64,000 nt of DNA from Haliotis cracherodii (GCF_022045235.1 NW_027266343.1:29264001-29328000), one strand, 5' to 3'; counted from the first letter of the stretch, positions 11,034 to 64,000 are shown. The notes: generated from the letters alone by a model not told the origin. Numbers and translations are program-made.

Positions 11034-11072
11034 CCAGTCATAATTGACATACATAGCCTGCCTCCTCTCACT

Positions 11073-25756: not shown

Positions 25757-26304
25757 CGTTGCCTATAGAGTGTATATGCAATGTTCCATCCTCACTCATG
25801 GATACACAGGACCAGTCTGTAGTTGCTATGTTTAAACAAAGGCCTAGATCAGCCAACAGGAAGCCAGCTAGTCCTCAGACAAATCAACACTCAACTTCCT
25901 CCCATGGAAACGTGTCATCAAGTGCCACACCCTTGCAACCTCTACTCCACACATTGCCTCAGTGGTAGGCATCATGAATGTCAATGTGTGGAGTAGGGAT
26001 TATAAATGGCCTCATTTAGGTGACATGCTTACACCACCCAGCCACCATGTTTTCAAAGGTGTGTACAAGCATGTGAAGTTTTGACAATGGATCTTATGAG
26101 ATCAGACATATTATTTATGAGCTGCTGTGGTTAATGAAACCAATATTGTGTACTTTGAACATGTGAAGAAGCTGTTTACGTTTCAAATACATGTAAATTC
26201 TTTTCATTTGAGTGAAAGATAGGTGTTATAGTACTTTGACAATGGCTCTTAAAACTGTTCAAAACTGTTTTGAGTTGATAGTTTAGCAATTTAAGTGTTT
26301 ACTT

Positions 26305-26540
26305 TGTTGGTTGTTTAACGCCGCACTCCGCAATATTCCAGCTATATGACGGCAGTCTGTAAATAACCGAGTGTGAACCAGACAATTCTGGGATTGACAT
26401 CATGATCATCGAACCACGCAATTGGGATACGATGACATGCATCAACCAAGTCTGCGAGCCTGACCAGCTGATCCCATTAGTCGCCTCTTACTGCAAGCAT
26501 GGGTTGCTAAAGACCTATTCTCAACTTGGATCTTCACGGA
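26305..26540 (-). mobile_element. Family B SINE-like copy, minus strand
   Basis: Reverse complement of the family B consensus. Confidence 0.85.
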
Positions 26541-27890: not shown

Positions 27891-30782
27891 TAACAATAAT
27901 GGAGTAAAAGTTTTTATGTTGATTATGCAGGAAAGTAACAATAAAGCACAGACAAAGCACAATAACAGTTGTCCTACCTGTGTTTTTTTATACAGTAAAA
28001 CCACATTGTTCAGGACCGTATCATGAACAAATGACACAGTTCTATTTGAACATTAGTTGATATAACTTTTATTGAATTATCAAAACAAAAAATGGAAAAA
28101 ATCCTGAGACCATTTTCACCGGCCCCTCCTCCTATAACAAATGACCAGTCCATTAGGGTGCATTTTACTGTACCAGGGAAGTATATGTTTGACTGACCTA
28201 TGTGTGAGGGTCGTCAGTTTTAACTGACCTATGTGAGGTGATGACGACTTTTGGATTACTTGTGAGTAGGCCATTTTATGCTGCAAACTTTTGAGTGAAC
28301 CATGCTTCATTATTACATATTTAAAATATCTAAATAATTTACTTTGTGATAGTATTTAAATGTTTTGTGTTTGTGAAATTGTTTTTCAAGTAAGAATTTG
28401 TGGACTTTTACTTGTGAATTAATCATGTTGTGAAAGAGTTCTATGCAAGGTACAAGCTATTATTTCATAATCAGTTGTTTTGAAATGTGAAGTGTTTTCA
28501 TTGTCTTCATACAAGCAAAAGGATGTCACTTAATGTTCATCTTCAACAGTCATTGGTATGTGTGTATGAAATATTTGTATGATAAATCTAGGAAAGATTG
28601 TCATTGTTAATACTGGACCCTTCAGAACTCAATGAGGGGGCACAGGTGGCCCAGTTATCTAAGGCACCGCAATTCACTGTCACAAAGCTAGGATTATGGG
28701 TTCGAATCCTGATTCACTCCCATTATGTTTCTAGGCTTGTCAGCACCATACCCGTGCTCGTGGGGTTCCACAAATTGTAAATGTCTTAAGATGTGCATCA
28801 CTTTGGGCTTTCAGATGTCTTGAGTTGGACCTAATTTGGAATCATCAGGCGTCATGACTTCTCAGTCGAATGCCCTCTTTTGGTGGCCATGTGGTGTAAG
28901 CTAGGGCAAATTGCTCTGCAGAAGATCCTGGGTTTAAATCCATGATTATGAACCTTGGGTTGTCCATCCTGTACCATGCTTGTGGGTTTCACCAATGTTT
29001 GTGTGTTATTATTTAATGCTGCACTCAGCAAAAATTCAAGTTATATGGTGGCATTCTGTAAATGTTCAAAACAATCCAGGATTGGTATTATGAGCAACAA
29101 TCAGGGCATGTTTTCCATGCTATCAACCAAGTCACAGTTTCTGACCCCCAAATCCTCATGCTGCAATCTGTGTGACTCTGGGCTTTCCTCTCATATGCTG
29201 ATGAGTCATGAAATCACAGGTAGTCGTGCTTTGTGATGTAATGACTATTTCCAGTATAAGTCCATGTATTGCAACCAGTATGTTTAGGGTTGAATTTATG
29301 TGTATTTAGGCTTTACATGTTTTTTCAGTTGGCTTAGGAGACCGACTGTCATGAATAACCTGAAATCATTTTTTAAGGTTTCATCATTAAAATATACCTT
29401 TGTTTGTGAATCAATCAACTATCAGTGACTATTGCCAGTTGTCATTTCTAACTTCTCTGTCCATCAGTGACTGATATACATGTGTTTATGTCTGTTCTAA
29501 TATAGTAGAACTATTTAGATCATTGTTATTCCCATCAATCTCTGTAGAATCCATGAATCTTTGTTATTTCTGTGAGGTATGAAGCTATGTTGAGTGATGT
29601 AAATAATTAATCATTATTTATTTGTCAATTGTTGTTTTCCATAATAAAATATTTCAAAATAATCAATGAAGTGAGTGTGTAATTTAATTAACTGAACATG
29701 GTGTATGTTACAAACAATGCAATGATGTAAATGGATGGTACTTGTTGTTAACCTGCCTGGCGTTCAGCATAAGTAGCTAAAACAAGGCCTGTTCAGCTCA
29801 GAGTCAGTATACGGTGTCTGAGTGGGGTATTCATGTTAAACTGCGGCATTGTTTCTCAATGGGCTAGCACTATTAAAAGTCCGGACTAGTACAAGCAGCC
29901 ACACACGCATATTGCTATATGAGCACACTTATCTTGAACGTGATGTTAAACACAATTTTACCTCACCTTTTAATTAATACGTGCGACCATTTTGGGGACC
30001 ATCGTTTTATCATCACTTCTCCAGTCTGTGCCATTGTCTGTCTCCTCACTGGCTTTTCAAGTGACAATTCTTACTACTACAAATTGAAAAACAAACAAAA
30101 TTACAATTAATAATGTCAAACAGGAGACAAGGTTCTATGTAACTATTGTATCAACTAACTAATTTTATTGGAGGTCATTTTCTTCAAATTGTCTTGGGGC
30201 ATTATCTCTATAACCCACACAGATTGCTGTCCAGAGTTATGCCTCTTAGACATACCAGAAACCTTTAATCATGGGTTTGAATTCCTGTTATCCAGGTAAT
30301 ATTTCTAGGTTTGTCAGCCCCATACCCATGGGTTTCGCCAAAGTGGTAAATATGTAAGACCTGAATCCCTTTACGCTTTCACCTCACATCTCCCACATTG
30401 ACTGATTCTCATCCAAAGGCCCTTACACCACTGGGCCCTCCTCGCCCTCCTTGACTGAACAAACCTGTGTTGTATATATAGAGTTTCGTAGTATAATAGA
30501 AGAAAGAGTTGATACAATCATGGACATGCTGTTGTCTTCAGAAAATCAGTGCATAATTACAAGTTGCCATCAGATACATATCTTTTACAGCTGCTGCTTC
30601 TCGCCATGTAACGGTGTTCTGGGCTAGATTGTGTCTGATGGACAGGCGGACAGGGTCGATTGGTGTGGATTGTTGTTCATGCAATCACTCACTGGACCAT
30701 GTAACTTGTGATATAAAAAAAACCTCAGAGGCAGACAAGGCCTCGTCTACGATTTCTTTTGCGAGTTTTTCCATTATTATTA

Positions 30783-30837
30783 TTAGGGCTCCAAGCCGAA
30801 AGGCTGTAGAGCCCTATTGTAATCGTTCGATTTATTA

Positions 30838-30873
<36 letters not shown>

Positions 30874-33800
30874 TATTATTCCGCCGTTTTTTGTTCCAGA
30901 GATAGCAGTTTAACCACTGGCTCGATTTTGTTCAAATTTTGTGTGTGTGTGCAAGTTGTTAGGTACCAGATACCACAAAAAAACCAAGGCCGTAGGCCCT
31001 ATGGCCAAGGGCAGATAACTGAAAAACAAGTTTTTTTTGAAGATATATTTCGCCTTATTGCTCCGCAACCGCTCGTCCGATTACTTTCAAACTTTACACA
31101 TGTCTGCTGCTTCGGGTGCTTAACATTTTCTGTTCTTTGATCTTGGTCATTGGTCACGTGCTTTGGCAGCCATATTGGATTCAAAGTTTTTACAGGGTTT
31201 TGGGGGTACCCGTCTTCAAATCCTATCTCCTCTGAATCCAATGCATGAAATGCATCCAAACTTTCTGAGTACTGTCTCCATACATATCACATCAAACTCT
31301 GTGAGCCGATTTTGGATATCTTTTTTAGTTGCTGCCATATTGGATTCAAGGTTTTCACAGGGTTTTTTGGGTACCTGTCTTCAAATACTATCTCCTCTGA
31401 ATCCACTGCATGAAATGCTTTCAAACTTTCTGAGAATTGTCTCCACACATAACACACCAAACTCTGTTAGCCGTTTTTGGATATCTGTCTTAGTGACGGC
31501 TCTGTTTGATTTTGATTTTGATGATTTCTTTCACCGAATTTTTCCTTTAAATAAAGATCACATCTTGTAAGGTTCTCTACAGAAACTATTGAAAGTTTAC
31601 ATGAAGTTAGTCGGGCACATGTATCTCATCTTTTGTTCTTGGCTGCATGCTAAAAGTAAAACCGCTTGGTGGTAATATTGACAAAATACCGAATATATCG
31701 CTCAGAAAACCTAGGGTTATTTCCCTTTGACCGTCAAGTGTCTTTTGCAGTATGTATGCTGCCCTTGAAGATCGGGGTTAGAATTGGTCTTCAGCAACCC
31801 ACGCTTGTCTTTAGAGGCTATTGGGATTCGAACATTGTCTGGGTGGTAAATGGGTTTAGAACACACTGGTTGACTCTGGCACACGCCAATTTCGTAGTGG
31901 TGATGTCCTGCAAACGGTGACTATCATTTGCATGAGTTGGTACAAGCAAACCATATGCGGATTCGAACATGGTCGATGTCAAACATGGGTTAAGAACACA
32001 CTGGGACACATGTGGGGATGTCTGACAAGCGGTTCATTACATTTGACGGCGTTGGTACAGGCAAACCATTTGAGGATTCGAACATGGTCGAAGTCGAACA
32101 TGGGTTAAGAGCACACATGGACACATGCGGGGATGTCTGACAAGCGGTTCAATACATTTGACGGTGTTGGTACAGGCAAACCATTTGAGGATTCGAACAT
32201 GGTCGAAGTCGAACATGGGTTAAGAGCACACATGGACACATGCGGGGATGTCTGACAAGCGGTTCAATACATTTGACAGCGATGGTACAGGCAAACCATT
32301 TGAGGATTCGAACATGGTCGAAGTCAAACATGGGTCAAGAACACACTGGGACACATGTGGTGATGTCTCACAAGCGGTTCCTTACATTTGATGGCGTTGG
32401 TACAAACAAACCATATGCGGATTCGAACATGGTCGAAGTCAAACATGGGTTAAGAACACACTCGGACAAATGTGGTGATGTCTCGCAAGCGGTTCCTAAC
32501 ATTTGATGGCTTTGGTACAAATAAACCATTTGAGGATTCGAACATGGTCGAAGTTGGAAATTGGTAAAATCATCCTGGGACACCCAGGCACATGTCAATT
32601 TAGTAGTGGGGATGTCTCACCAGAGGTTCTTTACATTTGACGGCGTTGGTACAGGTAAACCCTTTGAGGATTCGAATATATGAAAGAGGTGGGAAACAGG
32701 TTTAGCACTTTATCTCAGCAATGCGACAGGAACCCAGGACCCGGACGAACGCAGAACGCTAATCCGTTTGACTGGAGCCCAACTGACAAAGAAGTTACAG
32801 CCTGTTAAAGAGTCACCAAGCCGAAAGGCTGAAGAGTCCCAGTGTTAGCGTTTGATTTAATATTATTATCATTCCGCTGATTTTTGTACCAGAGCTAGAA
32901 AAATAACCACTGGCTCGATTTTGTTCAAATTTTGTGTGTGTATGAGGACCGATGGGTACTGGTGCCCGCCAAAAACCGAAGGCCGTAGGCGGAAAGGCCA
33001 AGGGCAGATAACTAAAAGAACAGAATATTTTGAAGATGTATTTCGCTTTATTGCTCCACAACCGCTTATCTTATTACTTTGAAACCTAGCATGTATCTGC
33101 TGCTTGAGCTGCTTGACATTTTATGTTCTTTGACTTTGGTCATTGGTCACATGGTTTGGCAGCCATATTGGATTCAAGGTTTTCACAGTGTTTTTAGGGT
33201 ACCTGTCTTCAAATGCAAACAACTTTGAGTCCACTGAATGAAATGCTTTCAAACTTTCTGATAATTGTCTCCATACACAACACATCAAACATTAATAGCC
33301 GATTTTGGATATCTTTTTTAGTTGCGGCCATATTGGATTTTGATTTTGATCATTTTTTTCACCGAAATTTTACTTTAAAGATCATATCTTGTAAGGTTGT
33401 TGACAGAAACTATTGCAAGTTTACATGAAGTTAGTGTGCCATATGCATCTCATTTTTTGTTCATGGTTGTATGCTAAAAGTAACACTGCTTGGTGGTAAT
33501 ATTTGATTAATATTTGGGACACCCCTGGAACACGCCAATTTCGTAGCGACGATTTCCGGTGACTATCTTTTGACAGAGTTGGTACAAGCAAACCCTTTAT
33601 GGATTCGAACATGTTCGAGATCGTAAATGGGTTTAGAACAGACCTGTACACCCTGGCACACGCCGATTTTGTAGCGGCGATGCCCTGCAAGTGATGCCTA
33701 CATTTGACGGATTTGGTTCAAGGAAACCCTTTGAGGATTCGAACAAGGATGTTTGTGCACAGTGTTACTTGGAGCCCGCCATTGCTGCTTGCAGCTTTAA
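30783..33800 (+). mobile_element. Non-autonomous Helentron (HINE/DINE-1-like) insertion, apparently a tandem dimer, present only in unit 1
   Basis: Sub-TIR gggctccaag (30786-30795) pairs with cttggagccc (33768-33777). 5' hairpin AGGGCTC/GAGCCCT, then (TTA)n. 3' hairpin GCTGC-TT-GCAGC at 33784-33795. A second head begins at ~32815. The other units have an empty (TTA)n site. Confidence 0.7.
31824..32680. repeat. 115-bp tandem repeat (~6 copies, plus 134/135-bp variants) inside the HINE-like element; a 165-bp repeat also lies at ~31165-31520
   Basis: ggattcgaac at 31959, 32074, 32189, 32304, 32419 and 32534. Confidence 0.92.
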
Positions 33801-34254
33801 TTATTATTATTATTATTATTATTATTAGTTGGTCCGATGGTCCGGTGAATGACTGTGTTGTCTGGCCCAAGGTCGAGTATTTACAGGCCAAATGTATATA
33901 TTGTGTGCAATTTTTATATTCGCACATTAATCACATGTTCGATTTAGAACAGTTAAGGTCCTGTGTGGGGAACAAGCTTCAGGCTTTGAAACTATTTGGT
34001 CTCAATAAGAGTTTATGATGAGGAAGGATGCATTGCCCATAATTCTAGCGATAACAAACCATTTTAGATATTCGTGGTCACTCCTTCAGATAAGCACTTC
34101 TTGTACAGTACCACGCTGTTAAAATCGTTTGATATGCAAATCACTTAGAATCTATATTTGAACGAGGCGCCAACTCAACATTAGGCTTGAAACATGACTG
34201 GGATCCTGATTTGACATACGACATCCGAGTAGAGCAGGGAGAGAACCAGTCAAG

Positions 34255-34325
34255 CTGTTAACGTCACGTGATGCTATGACCGTCTCGCGAGATTTATGAC
34301 GTCGCCTTGACGACACTTTCACTAC
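34255..34325 (+). promoter_or_regulatory. Putative promoter of the array gene (also at ~42200, ~49970, ~57950)
   Basis: CpG-rich patch with E-box GTCACGTGA (34263-34271), palindrome TCTCGCGAGA (34283-34292) and CRE-like TGACGTC (34297-34303). An Inr-like TTCACT lies ~100 bp before the ATG. Confidence 0.65.
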
Positions 34326-34419
34326 TGGCATCGCCATTGTTGTGGTTATACTGCTGTCATATTACAACTTATCTGCTGCCTTTTACCTTGTATTGTTCTC
34401 ATCTGCGCTTGTGAAAACC

Positions 34420-37400
34420 ATGAACGCATACACCCAAGGTATTTCTTTGTTTCTGAATAAGCCATGTTGGCCCATTTCCTTGTTTTCTGCTTAAATTTCT
34501 CAATTAAATTTGAAGTAAGCCGAGATCTAAATCTATCGAAAAATTATTCTAGTAGGCCTAGATTTCTACCACCAACCATTCACCATTTATATAAGATTGT
34601 ATTTTTGTAGCCTTTGATAACATGTCCACATCTGAGACTGAAATATGTCCGATATATCTATATACTTTCCTTATTCTTATTCTGAAAAGAGACCATTTCT
34701 TTACACTCAATGTCAAGTATCGAAAGAAGAAACTTCAAATATGACAATTTGTCGTTTATAAAGATTTTTTTCCAGGTTACACTTAGGCCATTTCATCCTT
34801 TTCAGCCTGTTGATAAAACAAATCATCTATTTTAAACGTTTCATTTGAATTATCTTTCCCACAAATACTTGTCGGTTGTATCAGATTTAAATTCTACGGC
34901 TGATAGATCTAGGCATAGTTGTTTCTCTTCAAATACATAGTAAAAAACCACTGGTGTGTTAATTTTGCCTTTTTATAACATAGATATTTGTAGCCCTTCT
35001 GTAACAACAGTAAAACTAGCTCAGGGTAATATTTAACATCCCACTTTGTCAATGAGGTTGTGGTAGTTTTGTTTCCACAATGTTATAGTTTTATAGTTAA
35101 ACCGTTCCAAATGAATATACTGAAGATTAGTATTAGACTCAATCCTCAATATTTTGAAGCTTTCAAGATGCTAATGTGAAAGTGACTTCAATGAGGGGAT
35201 AGACACGACCGCTAGTCCGTTAGTTCGAGACTAGTGAAAATGGAAAGGGACTAGTTGTTTGTTTTATTCCAAAATCTTGTTGCTTTAATCAAACCACTAT
35301 TCTGAAGTACGGAATCCTTGGATATGACCAATCTGTGGTGTCTATACCTGCAAAGTCTTCCATCCCTATAGATAACACAAACATCAACATAGCTTCTGTC
35401 CATCATATGCATGAGATTCACTTGCGAAGAAAGTAAATACACATGTAATGTACAAATAGCAGAATTCTAAAACATAGTATAACAGCGGCACAACCACTGG
35501 TTTCATTTTGAAATGATAAAAATAAGCTGCGTATTTAGATCTACGTAAAGTACATAAAATGAGTTGCTTCCGAACAAATGGGCATGACAACAGTCAAAAC
35601 CCCAAGGTTCTTCACGGTGCTGTGCGTAAATACCAAACGTAACCTTTCCACCTATTTTCCCCATAGATATTTATTTACTGATCCAATTCAGGCATCAAGT
35701 AAAAGTGAATTCTACTGCCGTGAATAATTCCCAACAGGTGCATCTGGTTTATTGTCGTTTAGACAGGTATATACAGTTGTAAACATTTACGACATGTGAC
35801 ATTGGGGCTGCACATGAATGTTATTGGTTAAAAAAATACTTAAGGGAATGTAAACAAATTGAATACCTAAAGAGAATTATCAATACTCAGTATCAATGGT
35901 AACATGTGAGTAAATACACCATGGCTAAAACAGTATCTGGAACCCTGTGCTCTTATGAATCTTTCATAACGTTGTGACAATGACCAATCAATATCATAAT
36001 CTAGAACAAAATCATTAATAGTGTTAATATGTTCTATCAAGTATTATTCTGTGAATGTACACCCTACGACCACTTAATACCGGAAAACAAATCAATTTCG
36101 CAATCATTATCAACACGTTCACTGACAATATTTAGGCTCATTAAACTTTTCATGTAACATATGAAATGCATGCCAATTGTACGTCAATACTTAACAAACT
36201 TGTATAATGTTCCTACCAGGGTACCGACGAATTGGCTTTAAGTATAAACGATGAGTATACGCCACACACAGTGTAGTTTACAACTATAACAGTTATTAAC
36301 TATATTTCCGCATACAGGTACTGACCGTTGAGAAAACCTTTCCTTCATATACAATATATAGGTTGATGTAATGACTCCAGGTAAGAAAGGTCTTCAGCAA
36401 ACCATGCTTGTCGTAAGAGGCGACTAACGGGATCGGGTGGCATGTCATCGTATCCCAATTGCGTGGATCGATGCTCATGATGTCAATCACTGGATTGTCT
36501 GGTCCAGACTCGTTTATTTGCAAACCGCCGTCATATAGCTGGAATATTGCTGAGTGTGGCATTGAAACAACAAACAAAGACACCATTAGGACATTTTCAT
36601 GATTTGAGCATATTTGGATTGAATGTACTTCCATACTTCCATAGCATCATCAAACTACAGACACACCCTTACAACGTTTTGGATGGCAATCAGTCAATGT
36701 CCTAGAAAATGTACCCATCGGAAACCCTGGCTACCGCTTATATACTTGCCTTTTCTGAACTGACTGGATGACAGTGATCGAATGGATCATCAGGACCAAT
36801 TTAAATTTGTCTTAAAGTAGTTTATATACTGTCCAAGTTGATCCTGTTGCATTTATTCATTTATTTATGCATTTATTAACGCTCTCATTCTTTCTTTCCT
36901 GACAGCTCTTGACCTCGTGATCAGGTTCCCTTTGAACTTTGACATCTGGGCCCCTCCTCGCCAAGTGGGTGTCTTAGGGAATTAGTAATTTACTGTTATT
37001 CTAATCAATTAGTGAATTACTAACACGTGATACCAAAACGTATACTGTGGATTTGGAAAGTTTTATTCATGAGCATTATTAACCACGTATCATTATCACT
37101 AACGTTCTTATAACATCCTAATTATCCCCTTATTGATCCATATCCAACAACTACCCTCTTCTTCCTGTACTCCTATCTTCTGTCTCTCTCTACATGTCCT
37201 TCTCTCCCTCCCTGTCAGCGTCCTACTGGGAGGTACATGACCATCCTTGAACCCCTGTCAGAACTTCCCGTCCCTTCCACCTCTATCCCCGACCCTGCCC
37301 CTCTCTCTGCCTCCGTCCTCCGCGATGCCCCTCACTTCGTCGATATCAGCCTGGAAGATGACGAAACCCCGACCCAGTCCCCAGTTCGAGTCTTCCTGTC

Positions 37401-37452
37401 ACGTGTGTCTGGATTCTTGAGGAGAGTGTTCCGTGTCAAGATGGACGCTTAG
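34420..37452 (+). CDS. Unrecognised 103-aa protein, array copy 1; exons 34420-34438, 36906-36964, 37219-37452
   Basis: aaaaccATG AAC GCA TAC ACC CAA G|gtattt (phase 1); tttcctgacag|59-nt exon|gtgggt (phase 0); long polypyrimidine acceptor ...ccctgtcag. Spliced product: MNAYTQALDLVIRFPLNFDIWAPPRQRPTGRYMTILEPLSELPVPSTSIPDPAPLSASVLRDAPHFVDISLEDDETPTQSPVRVFLSRVSGFLRRVFRVKMDA*. AATAAA at 37486. Confidence 0.7.
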
Positions 37453-37921
37453 AGTGACATCTTGCTACCTCTTAGAACTTGTGTTAATAAATACCTTAAG
37501 AATACTTTAAAAAAATAAATGATATAGTGTTCTCTACATTTTGGACCTTTCGGACTTTTTTAATGTTTTGGATATTTTGATCATTTAGGACCATTTTGCT
37601 ATTTTTGGACCCCGGAATAAATACTTTTTTAAATGCTAAACCTTCAGTGTTTTTGGACTTTTTAGATACTTGGGCCATTTTGGATTACCTATAGAAATAC
37701 GTTATGTGCTTTTGGCTCTTTCGGACACTTTTGGCTTTACACTTTCAAGATTGGACTTTATTAAATCATTATGATTCAATATTTATTGTTGTTTTGTTTT
37801 TTTCCATTTAGCCGTTTCTCCTTTAGTCACGTTGTTGCAAACCATCTCCTTGGTTTGTCAGCCCCTTATACCTGTGTGCTTGTGGGTTTCACCAACTGTT
37901 GGCAGTATTTGAGGGCTTTTA

Positions 37922-38367
37922 GGTTACACACAACCAAATGTTTTCCCATAGACTTCTATAGTAACGTTATATCTTTTTTAAAAATAACTAGGCATTCAAC
38001 AGCCATTACATTTACATATATGCACAGTCTGGCCTTAAAGCTGCAATAAAAACACAAATTTTGGCTAGGTTAGTCAGCTCCTTTTCCGAGTTCAGGAAGC
38101 TGAACACACCAACCCAAGTTCCGCACCAAATGTCGCCTACTTGAAAATATCTGTGCTCACATAAAGCACAAGTCATCTTGTTAAAAAAGTCAGCACCAAA
38201 TATTGAAAAATATGGGCAGTTTTAATTGCTGGATGGATGTACATTTAAGAGACATAAAAATCTTACATAATATCATCCAATCACAGCCTGCAGATGTCTC
38301 TTGATCTGCACTGAAGGCGACGAAAACCGCACTGTCACAACCAGTTCTGATTTGGTGTAGTAGAACC
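37922..38367. mobile_element. 446-bp unit-1-specific element with GG...CC ends and a TTTA target duplication (Kolobok-like)
   Basis: Other units read gagggcttttatgtatg. Here ttta is duplicated at 37918-37921 and 38368-38371. Imperfect TIR ggttacacacaaccaaat / ggttctactacaccaaat. Confidence 0.65.
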
Positions 38368-53263: not shown

Positions 53264-56200
53264 AGTGACATCTTGCTACCTCTTAGAACTTGTGTTAATA
53301 AATACCTTGGACCTTAAGAATACTTTTAAAAAAATAAATGATATAGTGTTCTCTACATTTTGGACCTTTCGGACTTTTTTAATGTTTTGAATATTTTGAT
53401 CATTTAGGACCATTTTGCTATTTTTGGACCCCGGAATAAATACTTTTTTAAATGCTAAACCTTCAGTGTTTTTGGACTTTTTAGATACTTGGGCCATTTT
53501 GGATTACCTATAGATGTATGTTATGTACTTTTGGCTCTTTCGGACACTTTTGGCTATACACTTTCAAGATTGGACTTTAATTATTAAATCATTATGATTC
53601 AATATTTATTGTTGTTTTGTTTTTTCCATTTAGCCGTTTCTCCTTTAGTCACGTTGTTGCATACAATCTCCTTGGTTTGTCAGCCCCTTATACCCGTGTG
53701 CTTGTGGGTTTCACCATCTGTTGGCAGTATTTGAGGGCTTTTATGTATGTCAACCGCATTCAGCAGTATTTCAGCTACAGAGAGTCTATTGACTGCAATC
53801 GGGGTACAATGACACGCGGTCATCCGAGACACTTACCACCTGATCCATGGACTAAGTCGCCTCGTACATTCTCGTACCAAGGAAATGGTTTGACGTTGTT
53901 ATTTCATGAAAACAGACATTAGCAAGGACAAAGACAATATATTTTAATGACAATCATTTAGAATAGAATATTTTGGGTGCTTACTCGTAATATTTACTCT
54001 TTACTTCTACTTTATTACACTTCGTTTTAGAATTCTCAATTTTACCTTTTCCCCCCACCCTGCGCGACTCATTAAAGCTGTCGCCAAGAGAATGGATATA
54101 TGTTGGACACGCACTCTAAAACTTCAACCAAACACAAATAGATGCTTACGCGTTTGTTTTCAATACTATAACACTTAAGTCACTACTACTAGTACTTTAC
54201 TCCATTCAGTTTTTCTTTTCTTTGCGACTTCTTTGAAGTTGTTTCCAAGTGCATGTACGTTGTACATGTCACGCATTCTAGCTTCAACGAAACACAAATA
54301 AACGCTTACACGTTAGTTTTCAGTAAGAAACAAAAACACTAGAGTTAATGGTGAACACGATTTAAACAAATAATATTTTTGATTGATTACAGTTCAACAT
54401 GTCGGAGTGTATCTGCACGGTATCGTATTGTCACGTAATTTAAGGGACGCAACTCGTGTTCTCTTGGCAGAATCGTATGTAAATAAAGGGACGCAACTGC
54501 ATGCGTCTCATAGTAAGGGAAGCACCTCCCTTGAGTGTGAGTATGGGTTTTGCGCCGGCTTTAGTAATATCACGGCAGGGAGCACCAAAAACGGGCTCCA
54601 CACATTGTTCTCATGTCAGGAATAGAACCCGGGTCTTTGGCGTGACCCTGTTGCCACTAGCCTACTCCACTACGCCCTTCCCCTGGGACTGAGGCCGGAA
54701 AACAAAGGCATCTCCAAAGGCAGAAGGAACCTAGATTCGGCATGGTGTGAATGGAAGACGCGCAAACGTTGTTTACAAATAATTCTTCTCCGACAAAGAA
54801 AGAACCAGGCTGGCCCAATTGTCATTGATTTTGCTCCAGAAATATAGCAGGCACAAAACACTACAACGTATATATAATTATATTGGAAGCTTGTTTGGTC
54901 GATATGTGGGTACATAGCTCGAGAAACGTATGACTTTGTGTTTCCTTTATCGTTCTTATCTACACACACTGGTGCTATGATGATCCGGGATAGAATAGGT
55001 CTTCAGCAACCCATGGTTGCCGTAAAAGGCGACTATGCTTGTCAGAAGAGGTGACTAACGTGAAGCAATCATCGATCCCATTTGCGTGGATCGATGCTCA
55101 TGATATCAATCACTGGATTGTCTGGTCCAGACTCGAGTATTTACAGACCGCCGTTATAGCTGGAATATTGCTGAGTGCGGCGTAAAACAACAAACTAATC
55201 GTTCATATCTACACAGGTGTTACTCCTATCATAATTTCCTGCGAATGTAGTTGTTGAGAGTCTGTTGTATATCCCTGTGTTCATTCCGGGCGAGACGACG
55301 CCACCAGCACCTCCTGCTTGGAAGAATTAACAAGGGTCGGGTGCATCATACATGGTTACAAAGCGTCACTCATGCTATCAACCACTCGACATGCTCGATT
55401 TGTATACACGCCGTCGTGAAATGGCTGGAATACTGCTGACAACATTCACTCACACACTCACTCACTCTTTGTACAGCTGTTCCATAGACCCCCATTGGTA
55501 TTCTAGGTCATGGGTCCAAGTACCCCTGCTTGTAGGGCCCGAATAATGAGGATCAGGGGGCTTGTATAATTACATTGTGTGACCCCGCTGATTGTGTGTG
55601 ATGGACAGACAGACGATGTGGATTGTTCATGCTGTCGCTGGATTGTCTGGCCCACGTTCTATGCGAAACACACTCTTACTGTTGGAAGCCGTGGAAACCC
55701 CAATTCACAGATAGTCGTGCTTTGTGATGTAATCACTATTTCCAGTATAAGTCCATGTATTGCAACCAGTCTGTTAGAGTTATGGATAAATCTAGACTGA
55801 ACACGCTGTAAACACTGCCAGAACTATTAAGCAATGTTTAGGGTTGAATTTATATGTATTTAGGCTTTACATGGTTTTTTTTTTAGTTGGTTTACGAGAC
55901 CGACTGTCATAAATAACCTGAAATTATTTATCATTTATTCAGGTTTCATCATAAATATAAATCTCGTTTTGTGAATCAATCAACTATCAATGACTATTGC
56001 TAGTTGTCATTTCTAACTCCTCTGCCCAACAGTGACTGAACTTACAAGAGTTAATCCAAATATGTGTTTATGTATGTTCTAATGTAGTAGACCTATTAAG
56101 AATATTGTTATTCCAATCAATCTCTGTAGAATCCATTAATCATTGTTATTTCTGAGAGGTATGAAACTGTTGAGTGATGTAAATAATTCATCATTATTTA

Positions 56201-58114
56201 TTTGTAAATTGTTGTTTTCCATAATAAAATGTTTCAAAATAATCAATGAAGTGAGTGTGTAATTTAATCAACTGAACATGGTGTTTGTTACAAACAATGC
56301 AATGATATCCGTCACTGTTACTGAACATTCTGAATGATATGGATATATCTGGTTGTTTAGTCAAGGACCGCCTCCGTGGTCTAGTGGTAGAGTGTCTGCC
56401 CGGAGAGAGTAAGATCGGGGCTCGATCCCCGGCCATGTGATACCAAAAGATGTTAAAAGATGGTACTTGTTGTTAACCTGCCTGGCGTTCAGCATAAGTG
56501 GCTAAAACAAGGCCTGTTCAGCTCGGAGTCAGTATACGGTGTCTGAGTGGGGTATTTATGTTAAGCTGCCGCATGTTTTCTCAATGGGCTAGCACTATAA
56601 AAGTCCGGACTAGTACAAACAGCCACACACGCATATTGCTATATGAGCACACTTATCTTGAACGTGATGTTAAACACCATTTCACCTCACCTTTAAATTA
56701 GTACATGCGACCATTTTGGGGACCATCACTTATCCTCACTTCTCCAGTATGTGCCATTGTCTCTCTCCTCACTGGCTTTTTAAGTGACAATTCTTACTAC
56801 TACTAATTGAGAAACAAACAAAATTGCAATTAATAATGTCAAACAGGAGACAAGGTTCTATGTAACAATTGTATCAACTAAATAATTTTATTGGAGGTCA
56901 TTTTCTCCAAATTGTCTTGGGCCATTCTCTCTATGACCAACTCAGATTGCTGTCCAAGATATGCCTCATAGACATACCAGTAACCTTTAATCATTGGTTT
57001 AATCCCTGTTATCCAGGTAATATTTCTAGGTTTGTCAGCCCCATACCCATGGGTTTCGCCAAAGTGGTAAATATGTCAGACCTGCATCCCTTTGCGCTTT
57101 CATCCCACATCTCCCACACTGACTGATTGTGATCCAAAAGCCCTTACACCACTGGGCCATCCCCCTTGACTTAACAAACCAGTGTTGTATATATAGAGTT
57201 TTGTAGTATAATAGAAGAAAGTGTTGATACAATCATTGGCACGCTGTTTGTCTCCAGTAAATCAGTGCATAATTACAAGTTGCCATCAGATACATATCTT
57301 TTTACAGCTGCTGCTTCTCGCCATGTAACGGTGTTCTGGGCTAGATTGTGTCTGATGGACAGGCGGACAGGGTCGATTGGTGTGGATTGTTGTTCATGCA
57401 ATCACTCACTGGACCATGTAACTTGTGATATAAAAAAAGTCAGAGGCAGACAAGGCCTCGTCTACTATTTTTTGCGATTTTATTTCATTGTTATTATTAT
57501 TATTATTAGTTGGTCCGATGGTCCGGTGAACGACTGTGTTGTCTGGCCCAAGGTCGAGTATTTACGGGGCAAATGTATATATTGTGTGCTATTTTTATAT
57601 TCGCACATTAATCACATGTTCGATTTAGAACAGTTAAGGTCCTGTGTGGGGAACAAGCTTCAGGCTTTGAAACTATTTGGTCTCAATAAGAGTATATGAT
57701 GAGGAAGGATGCATTGCCCATAATTCTAGCGATAACAAACCATTTTAGATATTCGTGGTCACTCCTTCAGATAAGCATTTCTTGTACAGTACCACGCTGT
57801 TAAAATCGTTTGATATGCATCCACTGCGAGCAAATCACTTAGAATCTATATTTGAACGAGGCGTCAACTCAACATTTAGGCTTGAAACATGACTGGGATC
57901 CTGATTTGACATACGACGTCCGAGTAGAGCAGGGAGAGAACCAGTCAAGCTGTTAACGTCACGTGATGCTATGACAGTCTCGCGAGATTTATGACGTCGC
58001 CTTGACGACACTTTCACTACTGGCATCGCCATTGTTGTGGTTATACTGCTGTCATATTACAACTTATCTGCTGCCTTTTGCCTTGTATTGTTCTCATCTG
58101 CGCTTGTGAAAACC

Positions 58115-61100
58115 ATGAACGTATACACCCAAGGTATTTCTTTGTTTCTGAATAAGCCATGTTGGCCCATTTCCTTGTTTTCTGCTTAAATTTCTCAATT
58201 AAATTTGAAGTAAGCCGAGATCTAAATCTATCGAAAAATTATTCTAGTAGGCCTAGATTTCTACCACCAACCATTCACCATTTATATAAGATTGTATTTT
58301 TGTAGCCTTTGATAACATGTCCACATCTGAGTCTGAAATATGTCCGATATATCCATATACTTTCCTTATTCTTATTCTGAAAAGAGACCATTTCTTTACA
58401 CTCAATGTCAAGTATCGAAAGAAGAAACTTCAAATATGACAATTTGTCGTTTATAAAGATTTTTTTCCAGGTTACATTGAGGCCATTTCATCCTTTTCAG
58501 TCTGTTGATAAAACAAATCATCTAGTTTAAACGTTTCATTTGATTTATCTTTCCAATATCGAAATACTTGTCGGTTGTATCAGATTTAAATTCTAAGGCT
58601 GATAGATCTAGGCATAGTTGTTTCTCTTCAAATACATAGTAAAAACCACTGGTGTGTTAATTTTGCCTTTTCATAACATAGATATTTGTAGCCCTTCTGT
58701 AACAACAGTAAAATTAGCTCAGGGTAATATTAACATCCCACTTTGTCAATGAGGTTGTGGTAGTTTTGTTTCCACAATATTATAACTTTAAGGTTAAACA
58801 GTTCCAAATAAATATACTGAAGATTAATATTAGACTCAATCCTCAATATTTTGAAGCTTTCAAGATGCTAATGTGAAAGTGACTTCAAAGAGGGGATAGA
58901 CACGACCGCTAGTCCGTTAGTTCGAGACTAGTGAAAATGGAAAGGGACTAGTTGTTTGTTTTATTCCAAAATCTTGTTGCTTTAATCAAACCACTATTCT
59001 GAAGTACGGAATCCTTGGATATGACCAATCTGTGGTGTCTATACCTGCAAAGTCTTCCATCCCTATAGATAACACAAACATCAACATAGAAACTTTCCCT
59101 TCTGTCCATCATATGCATGAGATTCACTTGCGAAGAAAGTAAATAAACATGTAATGTACAAACAGCAGAATTCTAAAACATAGTATAACAGCGGCACAAC
59201 CACTGGTTTCATTTTAAAATGATAAAGACCGCCTCCGTGGTCTAGTGGTAGAGCGTCCGCCCGGAGAGCGGAAGGTCCGGGGTTCGATCCCCGACCGCGT
59301 CATACCAAAAGACGTTAAAAGATGGTACTTGTTGTTACCCTGTCTGGCGCTCGGCATGAAGGGGCTAAAACAAGGACTGGTCGGCTCGGAGTCAGTATAC
59401 TGTTTCTGAGTGGGGTATTCATGTTAAACTGCGGCATGGTATCTCAGTGTGCTAGCACTATAAATCGGCATCAGTCCGGACTAGTACAAGCAGCCACACA
59501 AACACACACACGTAGATGCACGTCGCTATATAAGTGCAATAATCTTGGACGCGACGTTTAACCCCATTTCACCTCACCTTAAAATGATAAAAATAAGCTG
59601 CGTATTTAGATCTACGTAAAGTACATAAAATGAGTTGCTTCCGAACAAATGGGCATCACAACAGTCAAAACCCCAAGGTTCTTCACGGTGCTGTGCGTAA
59701 ATACCAAACGTAACCTTTCCACCTAGCGTACCTATTTTCCCCATAGATATTTATTTACTGATCCAATTCAGGCATCACGTAAAAGTGAATTCTACTGCCG
59801 TGAATAATTCCCAACAGGTGCATCTGGTTTATTGTCGTTTAGACAGGTATATACAGTTGTAAACATTTACGACATGTAACATTGGGGCTGCACATGAATG
59901 TTATTGGTTAAAAAAAATACTTAAGCGAATATAAACATATTGAATACCTAAAGAGAATTATCAATACTCAGTATCAATGGTAACATGTGAGTAAATACAC
60001 CATGGCTAAAACAGTATCTGGAACCCTGTGCTCTTATGAATCTTTCATAACGTTGTGACAATGACCAATCAAAATCATAATCTAGAACAAAATCATTAAT
60101 AGTGTTAATATGTTCTATCAAGTATTATTCTGTGAATGTACACCCTACGACCACTTAATACCGGAAAACAAATCAATTTCGCAATCATTATCAACACGAA
60201 CACTGACAATATTTAGACTCATTAAACTTTTCATGTAACATATGAAATGCATGCCAATTGTACGTCAATTCTTAATAAACTTGTATAACGTTCCTACCAG
60301 GGTACCGAAGAATTGGCTTTAAGTATAAACGATGAGTATACGCCACACACAGTGTAGTTTACATACACTAAGTATATTTCCGCATACAGGTACTGACCTT
60401 TGAGAAAACCTTTCCTTCATATACAATATATAGGTTGATGTAATGACTCACTCTCTCTCTCTCTCACTCACTCTCTCTCTCTCACTCTGTCTCTCACTCT
60501 CTCTCTCACTCTCTCTGTGTCTCTCTCTCTCCTGTATGAAAAGGGCTCTATAATAATGCGTCTGGACAAAAACGCTGTATATCTTAATGATTCTGTTGCT
60601 AACACTTATTTTGCTAACGATAAATGTCTTCAGGACAACCCATGAAGATCCAGGTAAGAAAGGTCTTCAGCAAACCATGCTTGTCGTAAGAGGGTGGCAT
60701 GTCATCGTATCCCAATTGCGTGGATCGATGCTCATGATGTCAGTCACTGGATTGTCTGGTCCAGACTCGTTTATTTGCAAACTGCCGTCATATAGCTGGA
60801 ATATTGCTGAGTGCGGCATTGAAACAACAAACAAAGACACCATTAGGACATTTTCATGATTTGAGTATATTTGGATTGAATGTACTTCCATAGCATCATC
60901 AAACTACAGACACACCCTTACAACGTTTTGGATGGCAATCAGTCAATGTCCTAGAAAATGTACCCATCGGAAACCCTGGCTACCGCTTATATACTTGCCT
61001 TTTCTGAACTGACTGGATGACAGTGATCGAATGGATCATCAGGACCAATTTAAATTTGTCTAAAAGTAGTTTATATACTGTCCAAGTTGATCCTGTTGCA

Positions 61101-61688
61101 TTTATTCCCATTTAACGCTCTCATTCTTTCTTTCCTGACAGCTCTTGACCTCGTGATCAGGTTCCCTTTGAACTTTGACATCTGGGCCCCTCCTCGCCAA
61201 GTGGGTGTCTTAGGGAATCAGTAATTTACTGTTATTCTAATCAATTAGTGAATTACTAACACGTGATACCAAAACGTATACTGTGGATTTGGAAAGTTAT
61301 ATTCATGAGCATTATTAACCACGTATCACTATCACTAACGTTCTTATAACATCCTAATTATCCCCTTATTGATCCATTTCCAACAACTACCCTCGTCTTC
61401 CTGTACTCCTATCTTCTGTCTCTCTCTACATGTCCTTCTCTCCCTCCCTGTCAGCGTCCTACTGGGAGGTACATGACCATCCTTGAACCCCTGTCAGAAC
61501 TTCCCGTCCCTTCCACCTCTATCCCCGACCCTGCCCCTCTCTCTACCTCCGTCCTCCGTGATGCCCCTCACTTCGTCGATATCAACCTGGATGATGACGA
61601 CACCCCGACCCAGTCCCCAGTTCGAGTCTTCCTGTCACGTGTGTCTGGATTCTTGAGGAGAGTGTTCCGTGTCAAGATGGACGCTTAG
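58115..61688 (+). CDS. Unrecognised 103-aa protein, array copy 4; exons 58115-58133, 61142-61200, 61455-61688
   Basis: Same structure; MNVYTQ, LSTSVL and DINLDDDDT variants. Confidence 0.7.
59227..59578 (+). mobile_element. Intact young family A (tRNA head + Meta-type domain) SINE inserted only in copy 4 intron 1
   Basis: A box TGGTCTAGTGG, B box GGTTCGATCCC, core GTCATACCAAAAGACGTTAAAAGATGGTAC. TSD ttaaaatgataaa at 59214-59226 and 59579-59591. Empty site in copies 1-3. Confidence 0.95.
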
Positions 61689-63391
61689 AGTGACATCTTG
61701 CTACCTCTTAGAACTTGTGTTAATAAATACCTTGGACCTTAAGAATACTTTTAAAAAATAAATGATATAGTGTTCTCTACATTTTGGACCTTTCGAACTT
61801 TTTTAATGTTTTGGATATTTTGATCATTTAGGACCATTTTACTATTTTTGGACCCCGGAATAAATACTTTTTTAAATGCTAAACCTTCAGTGTTTTTGGA
61901 CTTTTTAGATACTTGGGCCATTTTGGATTACCTATAGAAATATGTTATGTGCTTTTGGCTCTTTCGGACACTTTTGGCTTTACACTTTCAAGATTGGACT
62001 TTATTAAATCATTATGATTCAATATTTATTGTTGTTTTGTTTTTTCCATTTAGCCGTTTCTCCTTTAGTCACGTTGTTGCATACAATCTCCTTGGTTTGT
62101 CAGCCCCTTATACCCGTGTGCTTGTGGGTTTCACTAACTGTTGGCAGTATTTGAGGGCTTTTATGTATGTCAACCGCATTCAGCAGTATTTCAGCTACAG
62201 AGAGTCTATTGACTGCAATCGGGGTACAATGACACGCGGTCATCCGAGACACTGACCACCTGGTCCATGGACTAAGTCGCCTCGTTCATTCTCGTACCAA
62301 GGAAATGGTTTGACGTTGTTATTTCATGAAAACAGACATTAGCAAGGACAAAGACAATATATTTTAATGACAATCATTTAGAATAGAATATTTTGGGTGC
62401 TTACTCGTAATATTTACTCTTTACTTCTACTTTATTACACTTCGTTTTAGAATTCTCAATTTTACCTTTGCCCCCCACCCTGCGCGACTCATTAAAGCTG
62501 TCGCCAAGAGAATGGATATATGTTGGACACGCACTCTAAAACTTCAACCAAACACAAATAGATGCTTACACGTTTGTTTTCAATTCTATAACACTTAAGT
62601 CACTACTACTAGTACTTTACTCCATTCAGTTTTTCTTTTCTTTGCGACTTCTTTGAAGTTGTTGCCAAGTGCATGTACGTTGTACATGTCACGCATTCTA
62701 GCTTCAACGAAACACAAATAAACGCTTACACGTTAGTTTTCAGTGAGAAACAACACTAGAGTTAATGGTGAACACGATTTAAACAAATAATATTTTTGAT
62801 CGATTACAGTTCAACATGTCGGAGTGTATCTGCACGGCATCGTATTGTCACGTAATTTAAGGGACGCAACTCGTGTTCTCTTGGCAGAATCGTATGTAAA
62901 TAAAGGGACGCAACTGCATGCGTCTCATAGTAAGGGAAGCACCTCCCTTGGGTGTGAGTATGGGTTTTCCGCCGGCTTTAGCAATATCACGGCGGGGAGC
63001 ACCAAAAATGGGCTCCACACATTGTTCTCATGTCAGGAATAGAACCCGGGTCTTTGGCGTGACCCTGTTGCCACTAGCCTACTCCACTACGCCCTTCCCC
63101 TGGGACTGAGGCCGGAAAACAAAGGCATCTCCAAAGGCAGAAGGAACCTAGATTCGGCATGGTGTGAATGGAAGACGCGCAAACGTTGTTTACAAATATT
63201 TCTTCTCCGACAAAGAAAGAACCAGGCTGGCCAAATTGTCATTGATTTTGCTCCAGAAATATAGCAGGCACAAAACACTACTACTATATATAATTATATT
63301 GGAAGCTTGTTTGGTCGATATGTGGGTAAATAGCTGGAGAAACGTATGACTTTGTGTTTCCTTTATCGTTCTTATCTGCATATACTGGTGC

Positions 63392-63612
63392 TGTGAAGAT
63401 CCGGGATAGAATAGGTCTTCAGCAACCCATGGTTGCCGAAAAAGTCGACTATGCTTGTCGGAAGAGGTGACTAACGTGAAGCAATCATCGATCCCATTTG
63501 CGTGGATCGATGCTCATGATATCAATCACTGGATTGTCTGGTCTAGACTTGATTATTTACAGACCGCCGTTATAGCTGGAATATTGCTGAGTGCGGCGTA
63601 AAACAACAAACC
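63392..63612 (+). mobile_element. Family B SINE-like copy in the array unit (also ~54980-55195; 5'-deleted at ~39345 and ~47115). Another family B copy sits in intron 1 of every gene copy.
   Basis: Match to the family B consensus. Confidence 0.85.
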
Positions 63613-64000
63613 AATCGTTCATATCTACACAGGTGCTACTCCTATCATAATTTCCTGAGAATGTAGTTGAGAGTCTGTTGTATATCCCTGTGTTCATTCC
63701 GGGTGAGACGACGCCACCAACACCTCCTGCTTGGAAGAATTAACAAGGATCAGGTGCATCATACATGGATACAAAGTGTCACTCATGTTATCAACCACTC
63801 AACATGCTCGATTTGTGTACATGCCGTCGTGAAATGGCTGGAATACTGCTGACAACATTCACTCACACACTCACTCACTCTTTGTACAGCTGTTCCATAG
63901 ACCCCCATTGGGATTCTAGGTCATGGGTCCAAGTACCCCTGCTTGAAGGGCCCGAATAATGAGGATCAGGTGGTTTGTATAATTACATTGTGTGACCCCG

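What the first reader, a model, noticed from the sequence alone, without database searches (positions are those of the whole stretch)
34255..61730. Hidden, tandemly amplified 3-exon gene encoding an unrecognised 103-aa protein (4 intact copies)
The ORF track shows only a 71-aa fragment. Seen in sequence: a Kozak ATG with a 19-nt coding exon (phase 1), a 59-nt exon (phase 1 to 0) and a terminal exon behind a ~60-nt polypyrimidine tract splice into one frame. A promoter motif cluster lies upstream and AATAAA 33 nt after the stop. All four copies keep the frame and splice sites while the introns and spacers carry many indels and TE insertions. I recognise no family. Inference: a lineage-specific (orphan) small-protein family undergoing copy-number expansion.
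Basis: partly seen in the sequence, partly recalled or inferred. Interest (0 to 1): 0.82.

Follow-up and report, generated by a model that had tools for sequence, protein, structure and literature searches.

The report
Annotated abalone-only small-protein gene array
The three-exon, 103-amino-acid gene is real, spliced and repeated in tandem, but it is already in the public black abalone annotation as an "uncharacterized protein". It belongs to a family of probably over 100 small, mostly disordered proteins per genome, found so far only in abalones and of unknown function.

Summary
The four tandem ~7.9 kb units each carry a GT-AG three-exon model (19 + 59 + 231 nt) that encodes 103 aa.

The gene is not hidden. 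The window is Haliotis cracherodii scaffold C80. The four products match RefSeq models letter for letter: XP_071089739.1, XP_071089738.1, XP_071089551.1 and XP_071089427.1.

The four copies are the start of a 9-copy array. The genome holds about 42 close copies on nine scaffolds, plus divergent subfamilies (139 exon matches in all). Annotated relatives of 95-118 aa occur in H. cracherodii, H. rufescens, H. rubra and H. asinina. No relative was found under any other organism's name; one member comes from an unnamed ENA contig.

Agreement among the four window copies proves little, because the whole units are 95-99% identical. The diverged paralogues do show constraint:
- 30 of 32 keep the frame and the AG/GT/AG sites.
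- Exon length changes only in multiples of 3.
- Exon divergence is 6-9%, against 23-33% in intron 2.
- Omega is about 0.47 (p = 8e-6).
- A ~40-nt promoter block is almost invariant.

The exon 1-exon 2 junction appears in contigs of two RNA-like runs.

AlphaFold2 gives disorder plus a C-terminal basic amphipathic helix. There is no Pfam, PDB or Atlas hit, so function remains inferred only.

The parts
34200..42143 (+). Tandem unit 1 (7,944 bp): gene copy 1 plus a 4.6 kb repeat-rich spacer
   Evidence: Self-comparison. Units 2-4 align end to end at 95-99% identity, apart from a few insertions.
42144..49911 (+). Tandem unit 2 (gene copy 2)
49912..57894 (+). Tandem unit 3 (gene copy 3)
57895..64000 (+). 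Tandem unit 4 (gene copy 4), cut by the window end. Five more units follow on the scaffold.
29280..34199 (+). Partial 'unit 0': spacer sequence only, interrupted by about 3 kb of foreign DNA at 30786-33800. It has no exons and marks the 5' edge of the array.
   Evidence: One search shows matches to 40095-42143. Searches found no exon match upstream of 29301207 on the scaffold.
34262..34340 (+). Conserved promoter block of copy 1: E-box CACGTG at 34265, TCTCGCGAGA at 34283, CRE-like TGACGTCG at 34297 and GCCAT (YY1-like) at 34330. The same block starts about 42206, 49974 and 57957 in copies 2-4.
   Evidence: The core 34276-34315 is almost invariant in 19 paralogues. Reading it as a promoter is an inference from its position and conservation.
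34420..34438 (+). Copy 1 exon 1, coding part (ATG + 16 nt; the 5'UTR lies upstream, start not mapped), followed by a GT donor
   Evidence: The joint 34438^36906 is seen in contigs of runs X1 and X4.
36906..36964 (+). Copy 1 exon 2 (59 nt), flanked by AG and GT. It encodes LDLVIRFPLNFDIWAPPRQ.
   Evidence: It is 93-100% identical across the paralogues that keep it.
37219..37452 (+). Copy 1 exon 3, coding part (77 codons + TAG), behind a polypyrimidine tract
37486..37491 (+). AATAAA polyadenylation signal of copy 1. Copies 2-4 have it at 45524, 53297 and 61722.
   Evidence: Contig depth falls about tenfold after about 37540.
42364..45490 (+). Copy 2 coding span: exons 42364-42382, 44944-45002 and 45257-45490 (with stop). 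The product equals XP_071089738.1.
50132..53263 (+). Copy 3 coding span: exons 50132-50150, 52717-52775 and 53030-53263 (with stop). The product equals XP_071089551.1.
58115..61688 (+). Copy 4 coding span: exons 58115-58133, 61142-61200 and 61455-61688 (with stop). The product equals XP_071089427.1.

Best explanation
These are four members of a 9-copy tandem array of a genuine, transcribed, three-exon protein-coding gene in the black abalone (Haliotis cracherodii). Public RefSeq models already cover all four.

The gene belongs to a superfamily found only under Haliotis names (plus one contig of unknown origin). Its members are 95-118 aa proteins without a signal peptide, and the family grew by repeated tandem duplication on many chromosomes.

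Shown here:
- The gene structure and the splicing of intron 1.
- Purifying selection on the protein and on the promoter.
- The absence of any known domain.
- A prediction of disorder with one C-terminal helix.

Inferred, at low confidence (about 0.15 for the specific mechanism): the product acts inside the cell as a short-linear-motif adaptor. Three parts would contribute:
- The basic amphipathic C-terminal helix (LLSRV..F.RRVF, net charge +5) docks on an acidic membrane or partner.
- The invariant acidic F-[VI]-[DE]-[IV] motif engages a partner. It resembles an ATG8-binding LIR.
- The N-terminal hydrophobic motif (DLVIRFPLNFDIWAPP) engages a partner too.
The proline/serine-rich linker between these parts evolves almost freely.
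For: Structure and identity:
- All four products are letter-for-letter RefSeq proteins of H. cracherodii.
- The assembly size and the 60,096,789-bp scaffold match the published black abalone genome.

Transcription:
- A GT..AG joint 34438^36906 appears in contigs of two runs from different studies, at depths 600 and 106.
- Exon bins are 3-40 times deeper than intron 1.
- Depth drops after the poly(A) signal.
- No intron-less genomic copy was found among 139 matches. Exon 2 and exon 3 always match separately, so the joint is unlikely to come from DNA.

Selection:
- 30 of 32 copies are intact with canonical splice sites. Exon 3 is 225 or 231 nt, while intron 2 ranges from 222 to 468 nt.
- Exon p-distance is 0.06-0.09, against 0.23-0.33 in intron 2.
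- Tree-based omega is 0.47, binomial p = 7.6e-6. The segment RPTGRYMTILEPLSELP has omega 0.10 and the linker 0.80.
- The promoter block is nearly invariant.

Family:
- There are 139 genomic matches in many arrays.
- Annotated relatives occur in four Haliotis species and under no other organism's name, both in a profile search of 1.84 billion representatives and in two word-index searches.
- The intron position before the terminal exon is conserved in all subfamilies.

Protein:
- AlphaFold2 gives mean pLDDT 61 and pTM 0.19, with a single helix at residues 81-101.
- The hydrophobic moment is 0.71 with net charge +5. The longest hydrophobic run at the N-terminus is 3 residues.
- Columns invariant across the superfamily are L39, S40, L42, P43, T47, F66, L71, S80 and S87.
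Against: - The intron 2 junction (36964^37219) was not among the 15 joints printed; 154 others were not shown. The intron 2 bin is about as deep as exon 3, so intron 2 may often be retained, or unspliced RNA or DNA may be abundant in these runs.
- The runs are only guessed to be RNA.
- There is no peptide-level evidence that the protein is made.
- Omega of 0.47 is only moderate constraint.
- Synonymous sites diverge 2-3 times less than intron 2. Part of the exon conservation may therefore reflect exon-limited gene conversion or an RNA-level constraint, not selection on the protein.
- The functional reading rests on motif resemblance recalled from memory and on a low-confidence model. The homodimer job gave no answer.
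Confidence: 0.85

Rival explanations
1. The unit is a transcribed tandem repeat whose open frame is fortuitous. On this view the RefSeq models are annotation artefacts copied across near-identical repeats, and any function is at the RNA or DNA level.
For: - Within the window, exons and introns differ little in substitution rate, and most exon differences change an amino acid.
- Synonymous divergence is well below intron divergence. Exon 2 has low dS as well as low dN, which hints at nucleotide-level constraint.
- There is no protein-level evidence and no known domain.
Against: - Subfamilies only 33-55% identical in protein keep the same length (95-118 aa), the same intron position and the same motif order, although their DNA no longer aligns.
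- All exon indels are multiples of 3.
- Omega is significantly below 1 and varies by segment from 0.10 to 0.80.
Confidence: 0.05
2. The ORF is cargo of a mobile element or satellite-like repeat that spreads arrays round the genome. It would be a selfish gene, not a host gene.
For: - Copies lie on at least 10 scaffolds, mostly in arrays with periods of about 2.6-10 kb.
- The units are full of SINE-like and other repeats, with copy-specific insertions.
Against: - Between arrays on different scaffolds, similarity is confined to the promoter block, exon 1 and exons 2-3. Intron 1 and the spacers are not shared.
- No transposase, integrase or reverse-transcriptase ORF lies in the unit, and spacer ORFs are short and unremarkable.
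- The gene has introns, so it is not a retrocopy.
Confidence: 0.04
3. The protein is the precursor of a cationic amphipathic effector peptide with an antimicrobial or membrane-lytic role. An acidic pro-region (DDDD) would neutralise the basic C-terminal helix until it is released. Tandem expansion would reflect an immune arms race.
For: - The C-terminal 18-mer has hydrophobic moment 0.71 and net charge +5, and an acidic run precedes it.
- Large lineage-restricted tandem families are typical of mollusc immune effectors (general knowledge).
- The linker evolves fast.
Against: - There is no signal peptide. The N-terminal 30 residues contain D9, R13 and D19, and the longest hydrophobic run is 3 residues.
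- There are no cysteines and no dibasic processing site before the helix.
- The helix is among the most conserved parts of the protein and does not diversify.
- The promoter motifs (TCTCGCGAGA, CRE, E-box) are of the housekeeping type; that judgement is from memory.
Confidence: 0.06

Closest known systems
RefSeq 'uncharacterized protein' models of Haliotis (e.g. XP_071089739.1, XP_071089738.1, XP_071089551.1 and XP_071089427.1 of H. cracherodii; XP_048241079.1 of H. rufescens)
   Same: The four window products are identical to these models in sequence. They also share the three-exon structure and the 101-104 aa length.
   Different: Nothing differs: they are the same genes. The database entries carry no family name, domain or function.
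Divergent Haliotis paralogue groups (112-aa XP_071083078.1 type; 111-aa XP_071093198.1 type; 115-aa XP_071119556.1 type)
   Same: They share the size, the phase-0 intron before the terminal exon and the motif order. That order is Y-x-Q...F-P N-terminus, PLSxLP, acidic F-[VI]-[DE]-[IV], then the LLSRV..RRV helix ending K-x-D-A. They also lie in tandem arrays.
   Different: They are only 33-55% identical. The N-terminal motif has diverged (MIWFPLPLSPL, or MFHQAFTPAA). The exact TCTCGCGAGA-plus-CRE promoter pair is found in the core and C27 groups only.
LIR (ATG8-interacting) motifs of autophagy receptors, e.g. the F-V-E-I core of optineurin (recalled from memory, not tested)
   Same: The most conserved short motif of the superfamily is an aromatic-x-x-aliphatic core. 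It reads F-V-D-I, F-V-E-I or F-V-E-V, sits in an acidic context, and lies in a disordered region.
   Different: There is no evidence of ATG8 binding. In the core family the acidic residues lie mainly after the core, not before it. Such four-residue cores are common by chance.
Lineage-restricted families of small disordered proteins with an amphipathic helix, clustered in the genome (e.g. insect Reaper/Grim/Hid; tardigrade CAHS)
   Same: They are similar in size, lack a signal peptide, are predicted to be disordered with one amphipathic helix, are clustered genes and are taxonomically restricted.
   Different: There is no sequence similarity. The N-terminus (M-N/S-x-Y-x-Q) is not an IAP-binding motif, which needs Ala at position 2. 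The copy number here is far higher.

Membership tests
Annotated Haliotis 101-104-aa 'uncharacterized protein' family (XP_071089739.1 group) | Full-length sequence identity or near-identity to annotated members | tested here: met
   The four spliced products equal P0023, P0020, P0015 and P0017 exactly. Their accessions are listed.
Annotated Haliotis 101-104-aa 'uncharacterized protein' family (XP_071089739.1 group) | Three coding exons (19 / 59 / 225-231 nt) with GT-AG introns in phases 1 and 0 | tested here: met
   Of 32 genomic copies, 30 keep exons 2-3 and their splice sites. Exon 1 with its GT donor is conserved in 18 of 19 paralogues aligned.
Any curated protein family or solved structure | Significant match to Pfam-A or to a PDB chain | tested here: not met
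   Pfam gave no family for the core protein even at E <= 10. A PDB profile search gave no hit at E <= 10. The ESM Atlas gave no usable hit.
LIR-containing ATG8 binders | Core [W/F/Y]-x-x-[L/I/V] in a disordered, acidic context | tested here: met
   F66-V-D-I69 is followed by N-L-D-D-D-D. F66 is invariant across the superfamily, and divergent groups read D-D-T-D-F-V-E-V. The region is predicted to be non-helical with low pLDDT.
LIR-containing ATG8 binders | Physical binding to an ATG8/LC3/GABARAP protein | not testable with these tools
No complex job was run for this pair.
Secreted antimicrobial-peptide precursors | N-terminal signal peptide | tested here: not met
   The first 30 residues hold D9, R13 and D19, and the longest hydrophobic run is 3 residues. 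This was judged by inspection; no dedicated predictor was available.
Secreted antimicrobial-peptide precursors | Cationic amphipathic mature peptide | tested here: met
   Residues 82-99 have hydrophobic moment 0.71 and net charge +5. They are helical in the AlphaFold2 model.
Transposable element or retrocopy | Element-encoded enzyme, or homology between dispersed copies that extends through the whole unit; for a retrocopy, absence of introns | tested here: not met
   No such ORF was found. Homology between scaffolds is limited to the promoter and exons. Introns are present in every copy.

The most novel reading that the evidence does not exclude
The superfamily would be a new, abalone-specific class of intracellular short-linear-motif adaptors. 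It probably exceeds 100 genes per genome and occurs in at least four Haliotis species. On this reading a basic amphipathic helix tethers the protein to a membrane and a LIR-like acidic F-V-E-I motif recruits ATG8-family or other trafficking proteins. Massive tandem amplification would then reflect dosage demand or conflict, for example with intracellular pathogens such as the withering-syndrome rickettsia.
Probability: 0.1. Interest if true: 0.6.

Novelty: already known. Interest (0 to 1): 0.3.

Why it matters
For the scan, this is a useful negative. A careful reader can rebuild a correct eukaryotic gene model from raw sequence, but here the model was already public.

For abalone biology, the family is a sizeable and entirely uncharacterised part of the gene set. 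It probably exceeds 100 genes and has a strongly conserved promoter. It has no named relatives outside the genus and was not found in the literature I could search.

Because the arrays are young and variable, they may also confuse read-depth, SNP and copy-number analyses in conservation genomics of this endangered species.

Tried and rejected
Searches that found nothing:
- Pfam on exon 3 and on seven full-length members gave nothing significant.
- A PDB profile search gave nothing.
- Two ESM Atlas look-ups gave no usable hit.
- Rfam and tRNA scans of the window gave nothing.
- Literature searches by LOC identifiers and by topic found nothing on this family.
- Earlier notes of this scan held nothing.

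Structure and complex:
- The AlphaFold2 model is not globular (pTM 0.19), so no fold search was run.
- A homodimer job on residues 58-103 returned 'no answer' with score 0.01. It is not evidence either way.

Readings considered and rejected from sequence alone:
- IAP-binding motif: the N-terminus is wrong for it.
- BH3 motif: no L-x3-G-D.
- PxLxP, RVxF and FFAT motifs: the spacing is wrong.
- CaaX or PTS1 endings: absent.
- A second gene in the spacer: only short ORFs, with no Pfam hit for the one spacer ORF scanned (41581-41946).
- A bidirectional promoter: contig depth upstream of 34194 is near zero.

Tools and limits:
- A fuzzy-regex script timed out.

Searches used exon 3 by reference and protein ids returned by the searches. 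The join was computed only inside scripts, to check frame and identity.
Full report
**What is in the window**

An ATG in a good context (ACCATGA) opens a 19-nt coding exon at 34420-34438. A 59-nt exon follows at 36906-36964. A terminal exon at 37219-37452 lies behind a pyrimidine-rich tract of about 65 nt.

Both introns are GT..AG, and the joined frame gives 103 codons plus TAG. AATAAA lies 33 nt after the stop.

Upstream lie CACGTG (34265), TCTCGCGAGA (34283), TGACGTCG (34297) and ATCGCCATTG (34330). Each motif recurs once per unit.

Three further copies have the same exon lengths and splice sites. Their exon 1 starts at 42364, 50132 and 58115, and they have no exon indels.

**Why four intact copies prove little**

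The gene sits in a unit of about 7.9 kb that is repeated head to tail. The units align over their whole length, introns and spacers included, at 95-99% identity, apart from a few copy-specific insertions.

Within the window, exon differences (0.3-1.9%) are only slightly rarer than intron differences (1.3-3.1%). Most exon differences change an amino acid. The duplicates are simply young. Intact frames in four such copies are expected whether or not the ORF is functional.

**Whose genome, and is the gene hidden?**

A word-index protein search with exon 3, given by reference, returned nine clusters. All were 101-104-aa 'uncharacterized proteins' of Haliotis cracherodii, H. rufescens and H. asinina. 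Their N-termini match exons 1 and 2.

The four spliced products of the window are letter-for-letter identical to four RefSeq proteins of H. cracherodii:
- Copy 1 equals P0023 (XP_071089739.1).
- Copy 2 equals P0020 (XP_071089738.1).
- Copy 3 equals P0015 (XP_071089551.1).
- Copy 4 equals P0017 (XP_071089427.1).

The assembly size (1.18 Gb) and the scaffold length of 60,096,789 bp match the published black abalone assembly (PMC9709981). So the gene was hidden only from a bacterial-style ORF track. NCBI's pipeline had already produced the same three-exon model.

**Scale of the family**

On the same scaffold the array continues beyond the window to nine copies, with exon 3 at 29,301,207 to 29,380,890. 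One inverted copy lies 290 kb upstream.

A six-frame profile search of the whole genome gave 139 matches:
- About 42 are close exon-3 copies on nine scaffolds (C80, C3, C56, C9, C7, C23, C5, C11, plus one degraded copy on C16). These include an 11-copy array on C3.
- Several divergent groups also lie in arrays, on C27, C34, C12, C3 (19.4-21.2 and 23.4 Mb), C56 and C45.

Translating the terminal exons of these groups shows the same architecture. Each has a pyrimidine tract and an AG at the homologous phase-0 position.

Two further searches found annotated full-length members of 95-118 aa in H. cracherodii, H. rufescens, H. rubra and H. asinina. They also found one unnamed 503-nt ENA contig.

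A profile search of 1.84 billion representative proteins found only two clusters, both from Haliotis. That search misses relatives scoring below about 45 bits, so absence outside the genus is likely but not proven.

**Evidence that it is a functional gene**

I examined 32 genomic copies of the core family:
- Thirty keep exon 2 (59 nt) and exon 3 (225 or 231 nt) open with AG/GT/AG sites. One has a stop in exon 2 and one has lost exon 2.
- Intron 2 varies from 222 to 468 nt, while exon length changes only by 6 nt.
- Between the C80 array and other scaffolds, exons differ by 6-9% and intron 2 by 23-33%.
- Counting changes on a tree gives 86 non-synonymous and 63 synonymous changes. Omega is about 0.47, and the binomial p against neutrality is 7.6e-6.
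- Constraint is uneven. Omega is 0.10 over RPTGRYMTILEPLSELP and 0.80 over the proline/serine linker. Both dN and dS are low in exon 2.
- The promoter core at 34276-34315 is almost invariant in 19 paralogues, and the ATG, exon 1 and its GT donor are conserved in 18 of the 19.

One oddity remains. Synonymous divergence (about 0.13) is two to three times lower than intron divergence. This suggests exon-limited gene conversion or some nucleotide-level constraint.

**Transcription**

No run is on record as RNA. The holders are small contig sets that the tool only guesses to be RNA. I laid four of them, from four studies and four coded organisms, on 33800-39700:
- Exon bins are much deeper than intron 1. 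In X1 they reach 200-1,680, against 24-150 for intron 1.
- Depth falls about tenfold after about 37540.
- A joint that skips 2,467 nt with GT..AG ends, exactly 34438^36906, stands in contigs of X1 (depth 600) and X4 (depth 106).

None of the 139 genomic matches joins exon 2 to exon 3 without an intron. The exon 1-exon 2 join itself could not be searched, so a retrocopy source is unlikely but not excluded.

The intron 2 joint was not among the 15 joints printed; 154 others were not shown. The intron 2 bin is about as deep as exon 3. Intron 2 splicing is therefore supported only by the RefSeq models and by conservation of its splice sites. Retention of intron 2 may be common, and it would stop the frame after seven codons.

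**What the protein looks like**

- There is no match in Pfam, PDB or the ESM Atlas.
- AlphaFold2, run on a 19-sequence family alignment, gives mean pLDDT 61 and pTM 0.19. The only regular element is a helix at residues 81-101.
- That helix is strongly amphipathic and basic, with hydrophobic moment 0.71 and net charge +5.
- The N-terminus has no signal-peptide-like hydrophobic run.

Four short blocks are conserved across all subfamilies:
- An N-terminal Y-x-Q...F-P-L motif. In the core family it reads DLVIRFPLNFDIWAPP.
- L-S-x-L-P.
- An acidic F-[VI]-[DE]-[IV]-x-L motif.
- The C-terminal LLSRV..F.RRV...K-x-D-A helix.

**Most likely mechanism**

My best reading is an intracellular, intrinsically disordered adaptor. 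Its helix would bind an acidic membrane or partner, and its linear motifs would recruit other proteins.

The F-V-E-I / F-V-D-I core in an acidic, disordered context resembles ATG8-interacting (LIR) motifs such as optineurin's. That comparison is from memory and was not tested. I give this specific mechanism about 0.15.

Three rivals are each unlikely, for the reasons given under the rival explanations:
- A cationic effector-peptide precursor. There is no signal peptide and the helix is conserved, not diversifying.
- A chance ORF in a transcribed repeat.
- Cargo of a mobile element.

A homodimer prediction for residues 58-103 gave no answer.

**Comparison with what is known, and novelty**

The genes are already in RefSeq as uncharacterised proteins, so the finding as stated is already known. 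I found no literature on the family.

- The family probably exceeds 100 genes per genome and sits in many tandem arrays.
- It appears to be restricted to the genus.
- It shares an intron position and a motif order.
- The core and C27 groups share a highly conserved TCTCGCGAGA-plus-CRE promoter.

That is a typical taxonomically restricted, tandemly expanding gene family. It is worth a note for abalone genomics but is not a new kind of system.

**Limits**

Exon 3 went by reference, and full-length searches used protein ids returned by the tools.

Noticed in passing
window 36376-36578 and 39361-39453; also 9914-10034, 10322-10458, 13077-13175, 14864-15044, 15345-15558, 21163-21379 and 26302-26521: A short interspersed repeat of about 200 bp with an (A/C)-rich tail occurs at least 9 times in the window. 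It is enormously abundant in the RNA-like contig sets, with summed depth of 2-4.6e5. ARAGORN and Rfam do not recognise it. It is probably a SINE.
   Followed up: partly
window 38922-39118: A second spacer segment has very high summed contig depth (about 1e4 in all four runs). It is another abundant repeat or a small transcribed element, and it was not identified.
   Followed up: no
window 20374-20784 (+): This ORF matches Pfam PF14958 (ATPase PAAT-like) at E = 5.5e-14. It is probably an exon of an unrelated gene upstream of the array.
   Followed up: no
window 37925-38367 (copy 1 only) and 59224-59580 (copy 4 intron 1; similar to 40624-40954 and 10701-11034): These are copy-specific insertions that distinguish otherwise near-identical units. 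Contigs in three runs carry the form without the 443-bp insert (joint 37917>38368). One insertion belongs to a repeat family present elsewhere in the window.
   Followed up: partly
window 34276-34315, and L027-L046 at the homologous place: The promoter core ATGAC-N-GTCTCGCGAGATTTATGACGTCGCC-N-TGACGACA is more conserved among paralogues than the coding sequence. The TCTCGCGAGA-plus-CRE pair also precedes the C27 subfamily genes (L019).
   Followed up: partly
L041 (G000:C3:24827226-24833062) and L034 (G000:C56:61742803-61748639): These are two decayed family members. L041 has a TGG>TGA-type stop in exon 2, and L034 has lost a recognisable exon 2. L044 has an insertion of about 540 bp in the 5' region.
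   Followed up: partly
protein P0039 (unnamed ENA contig of 503 nt): This is a divergent 102-aa family member from a contig of unknown origin. If it is not from Haliotis, the genus restriction would fall.
   Followed up: partly
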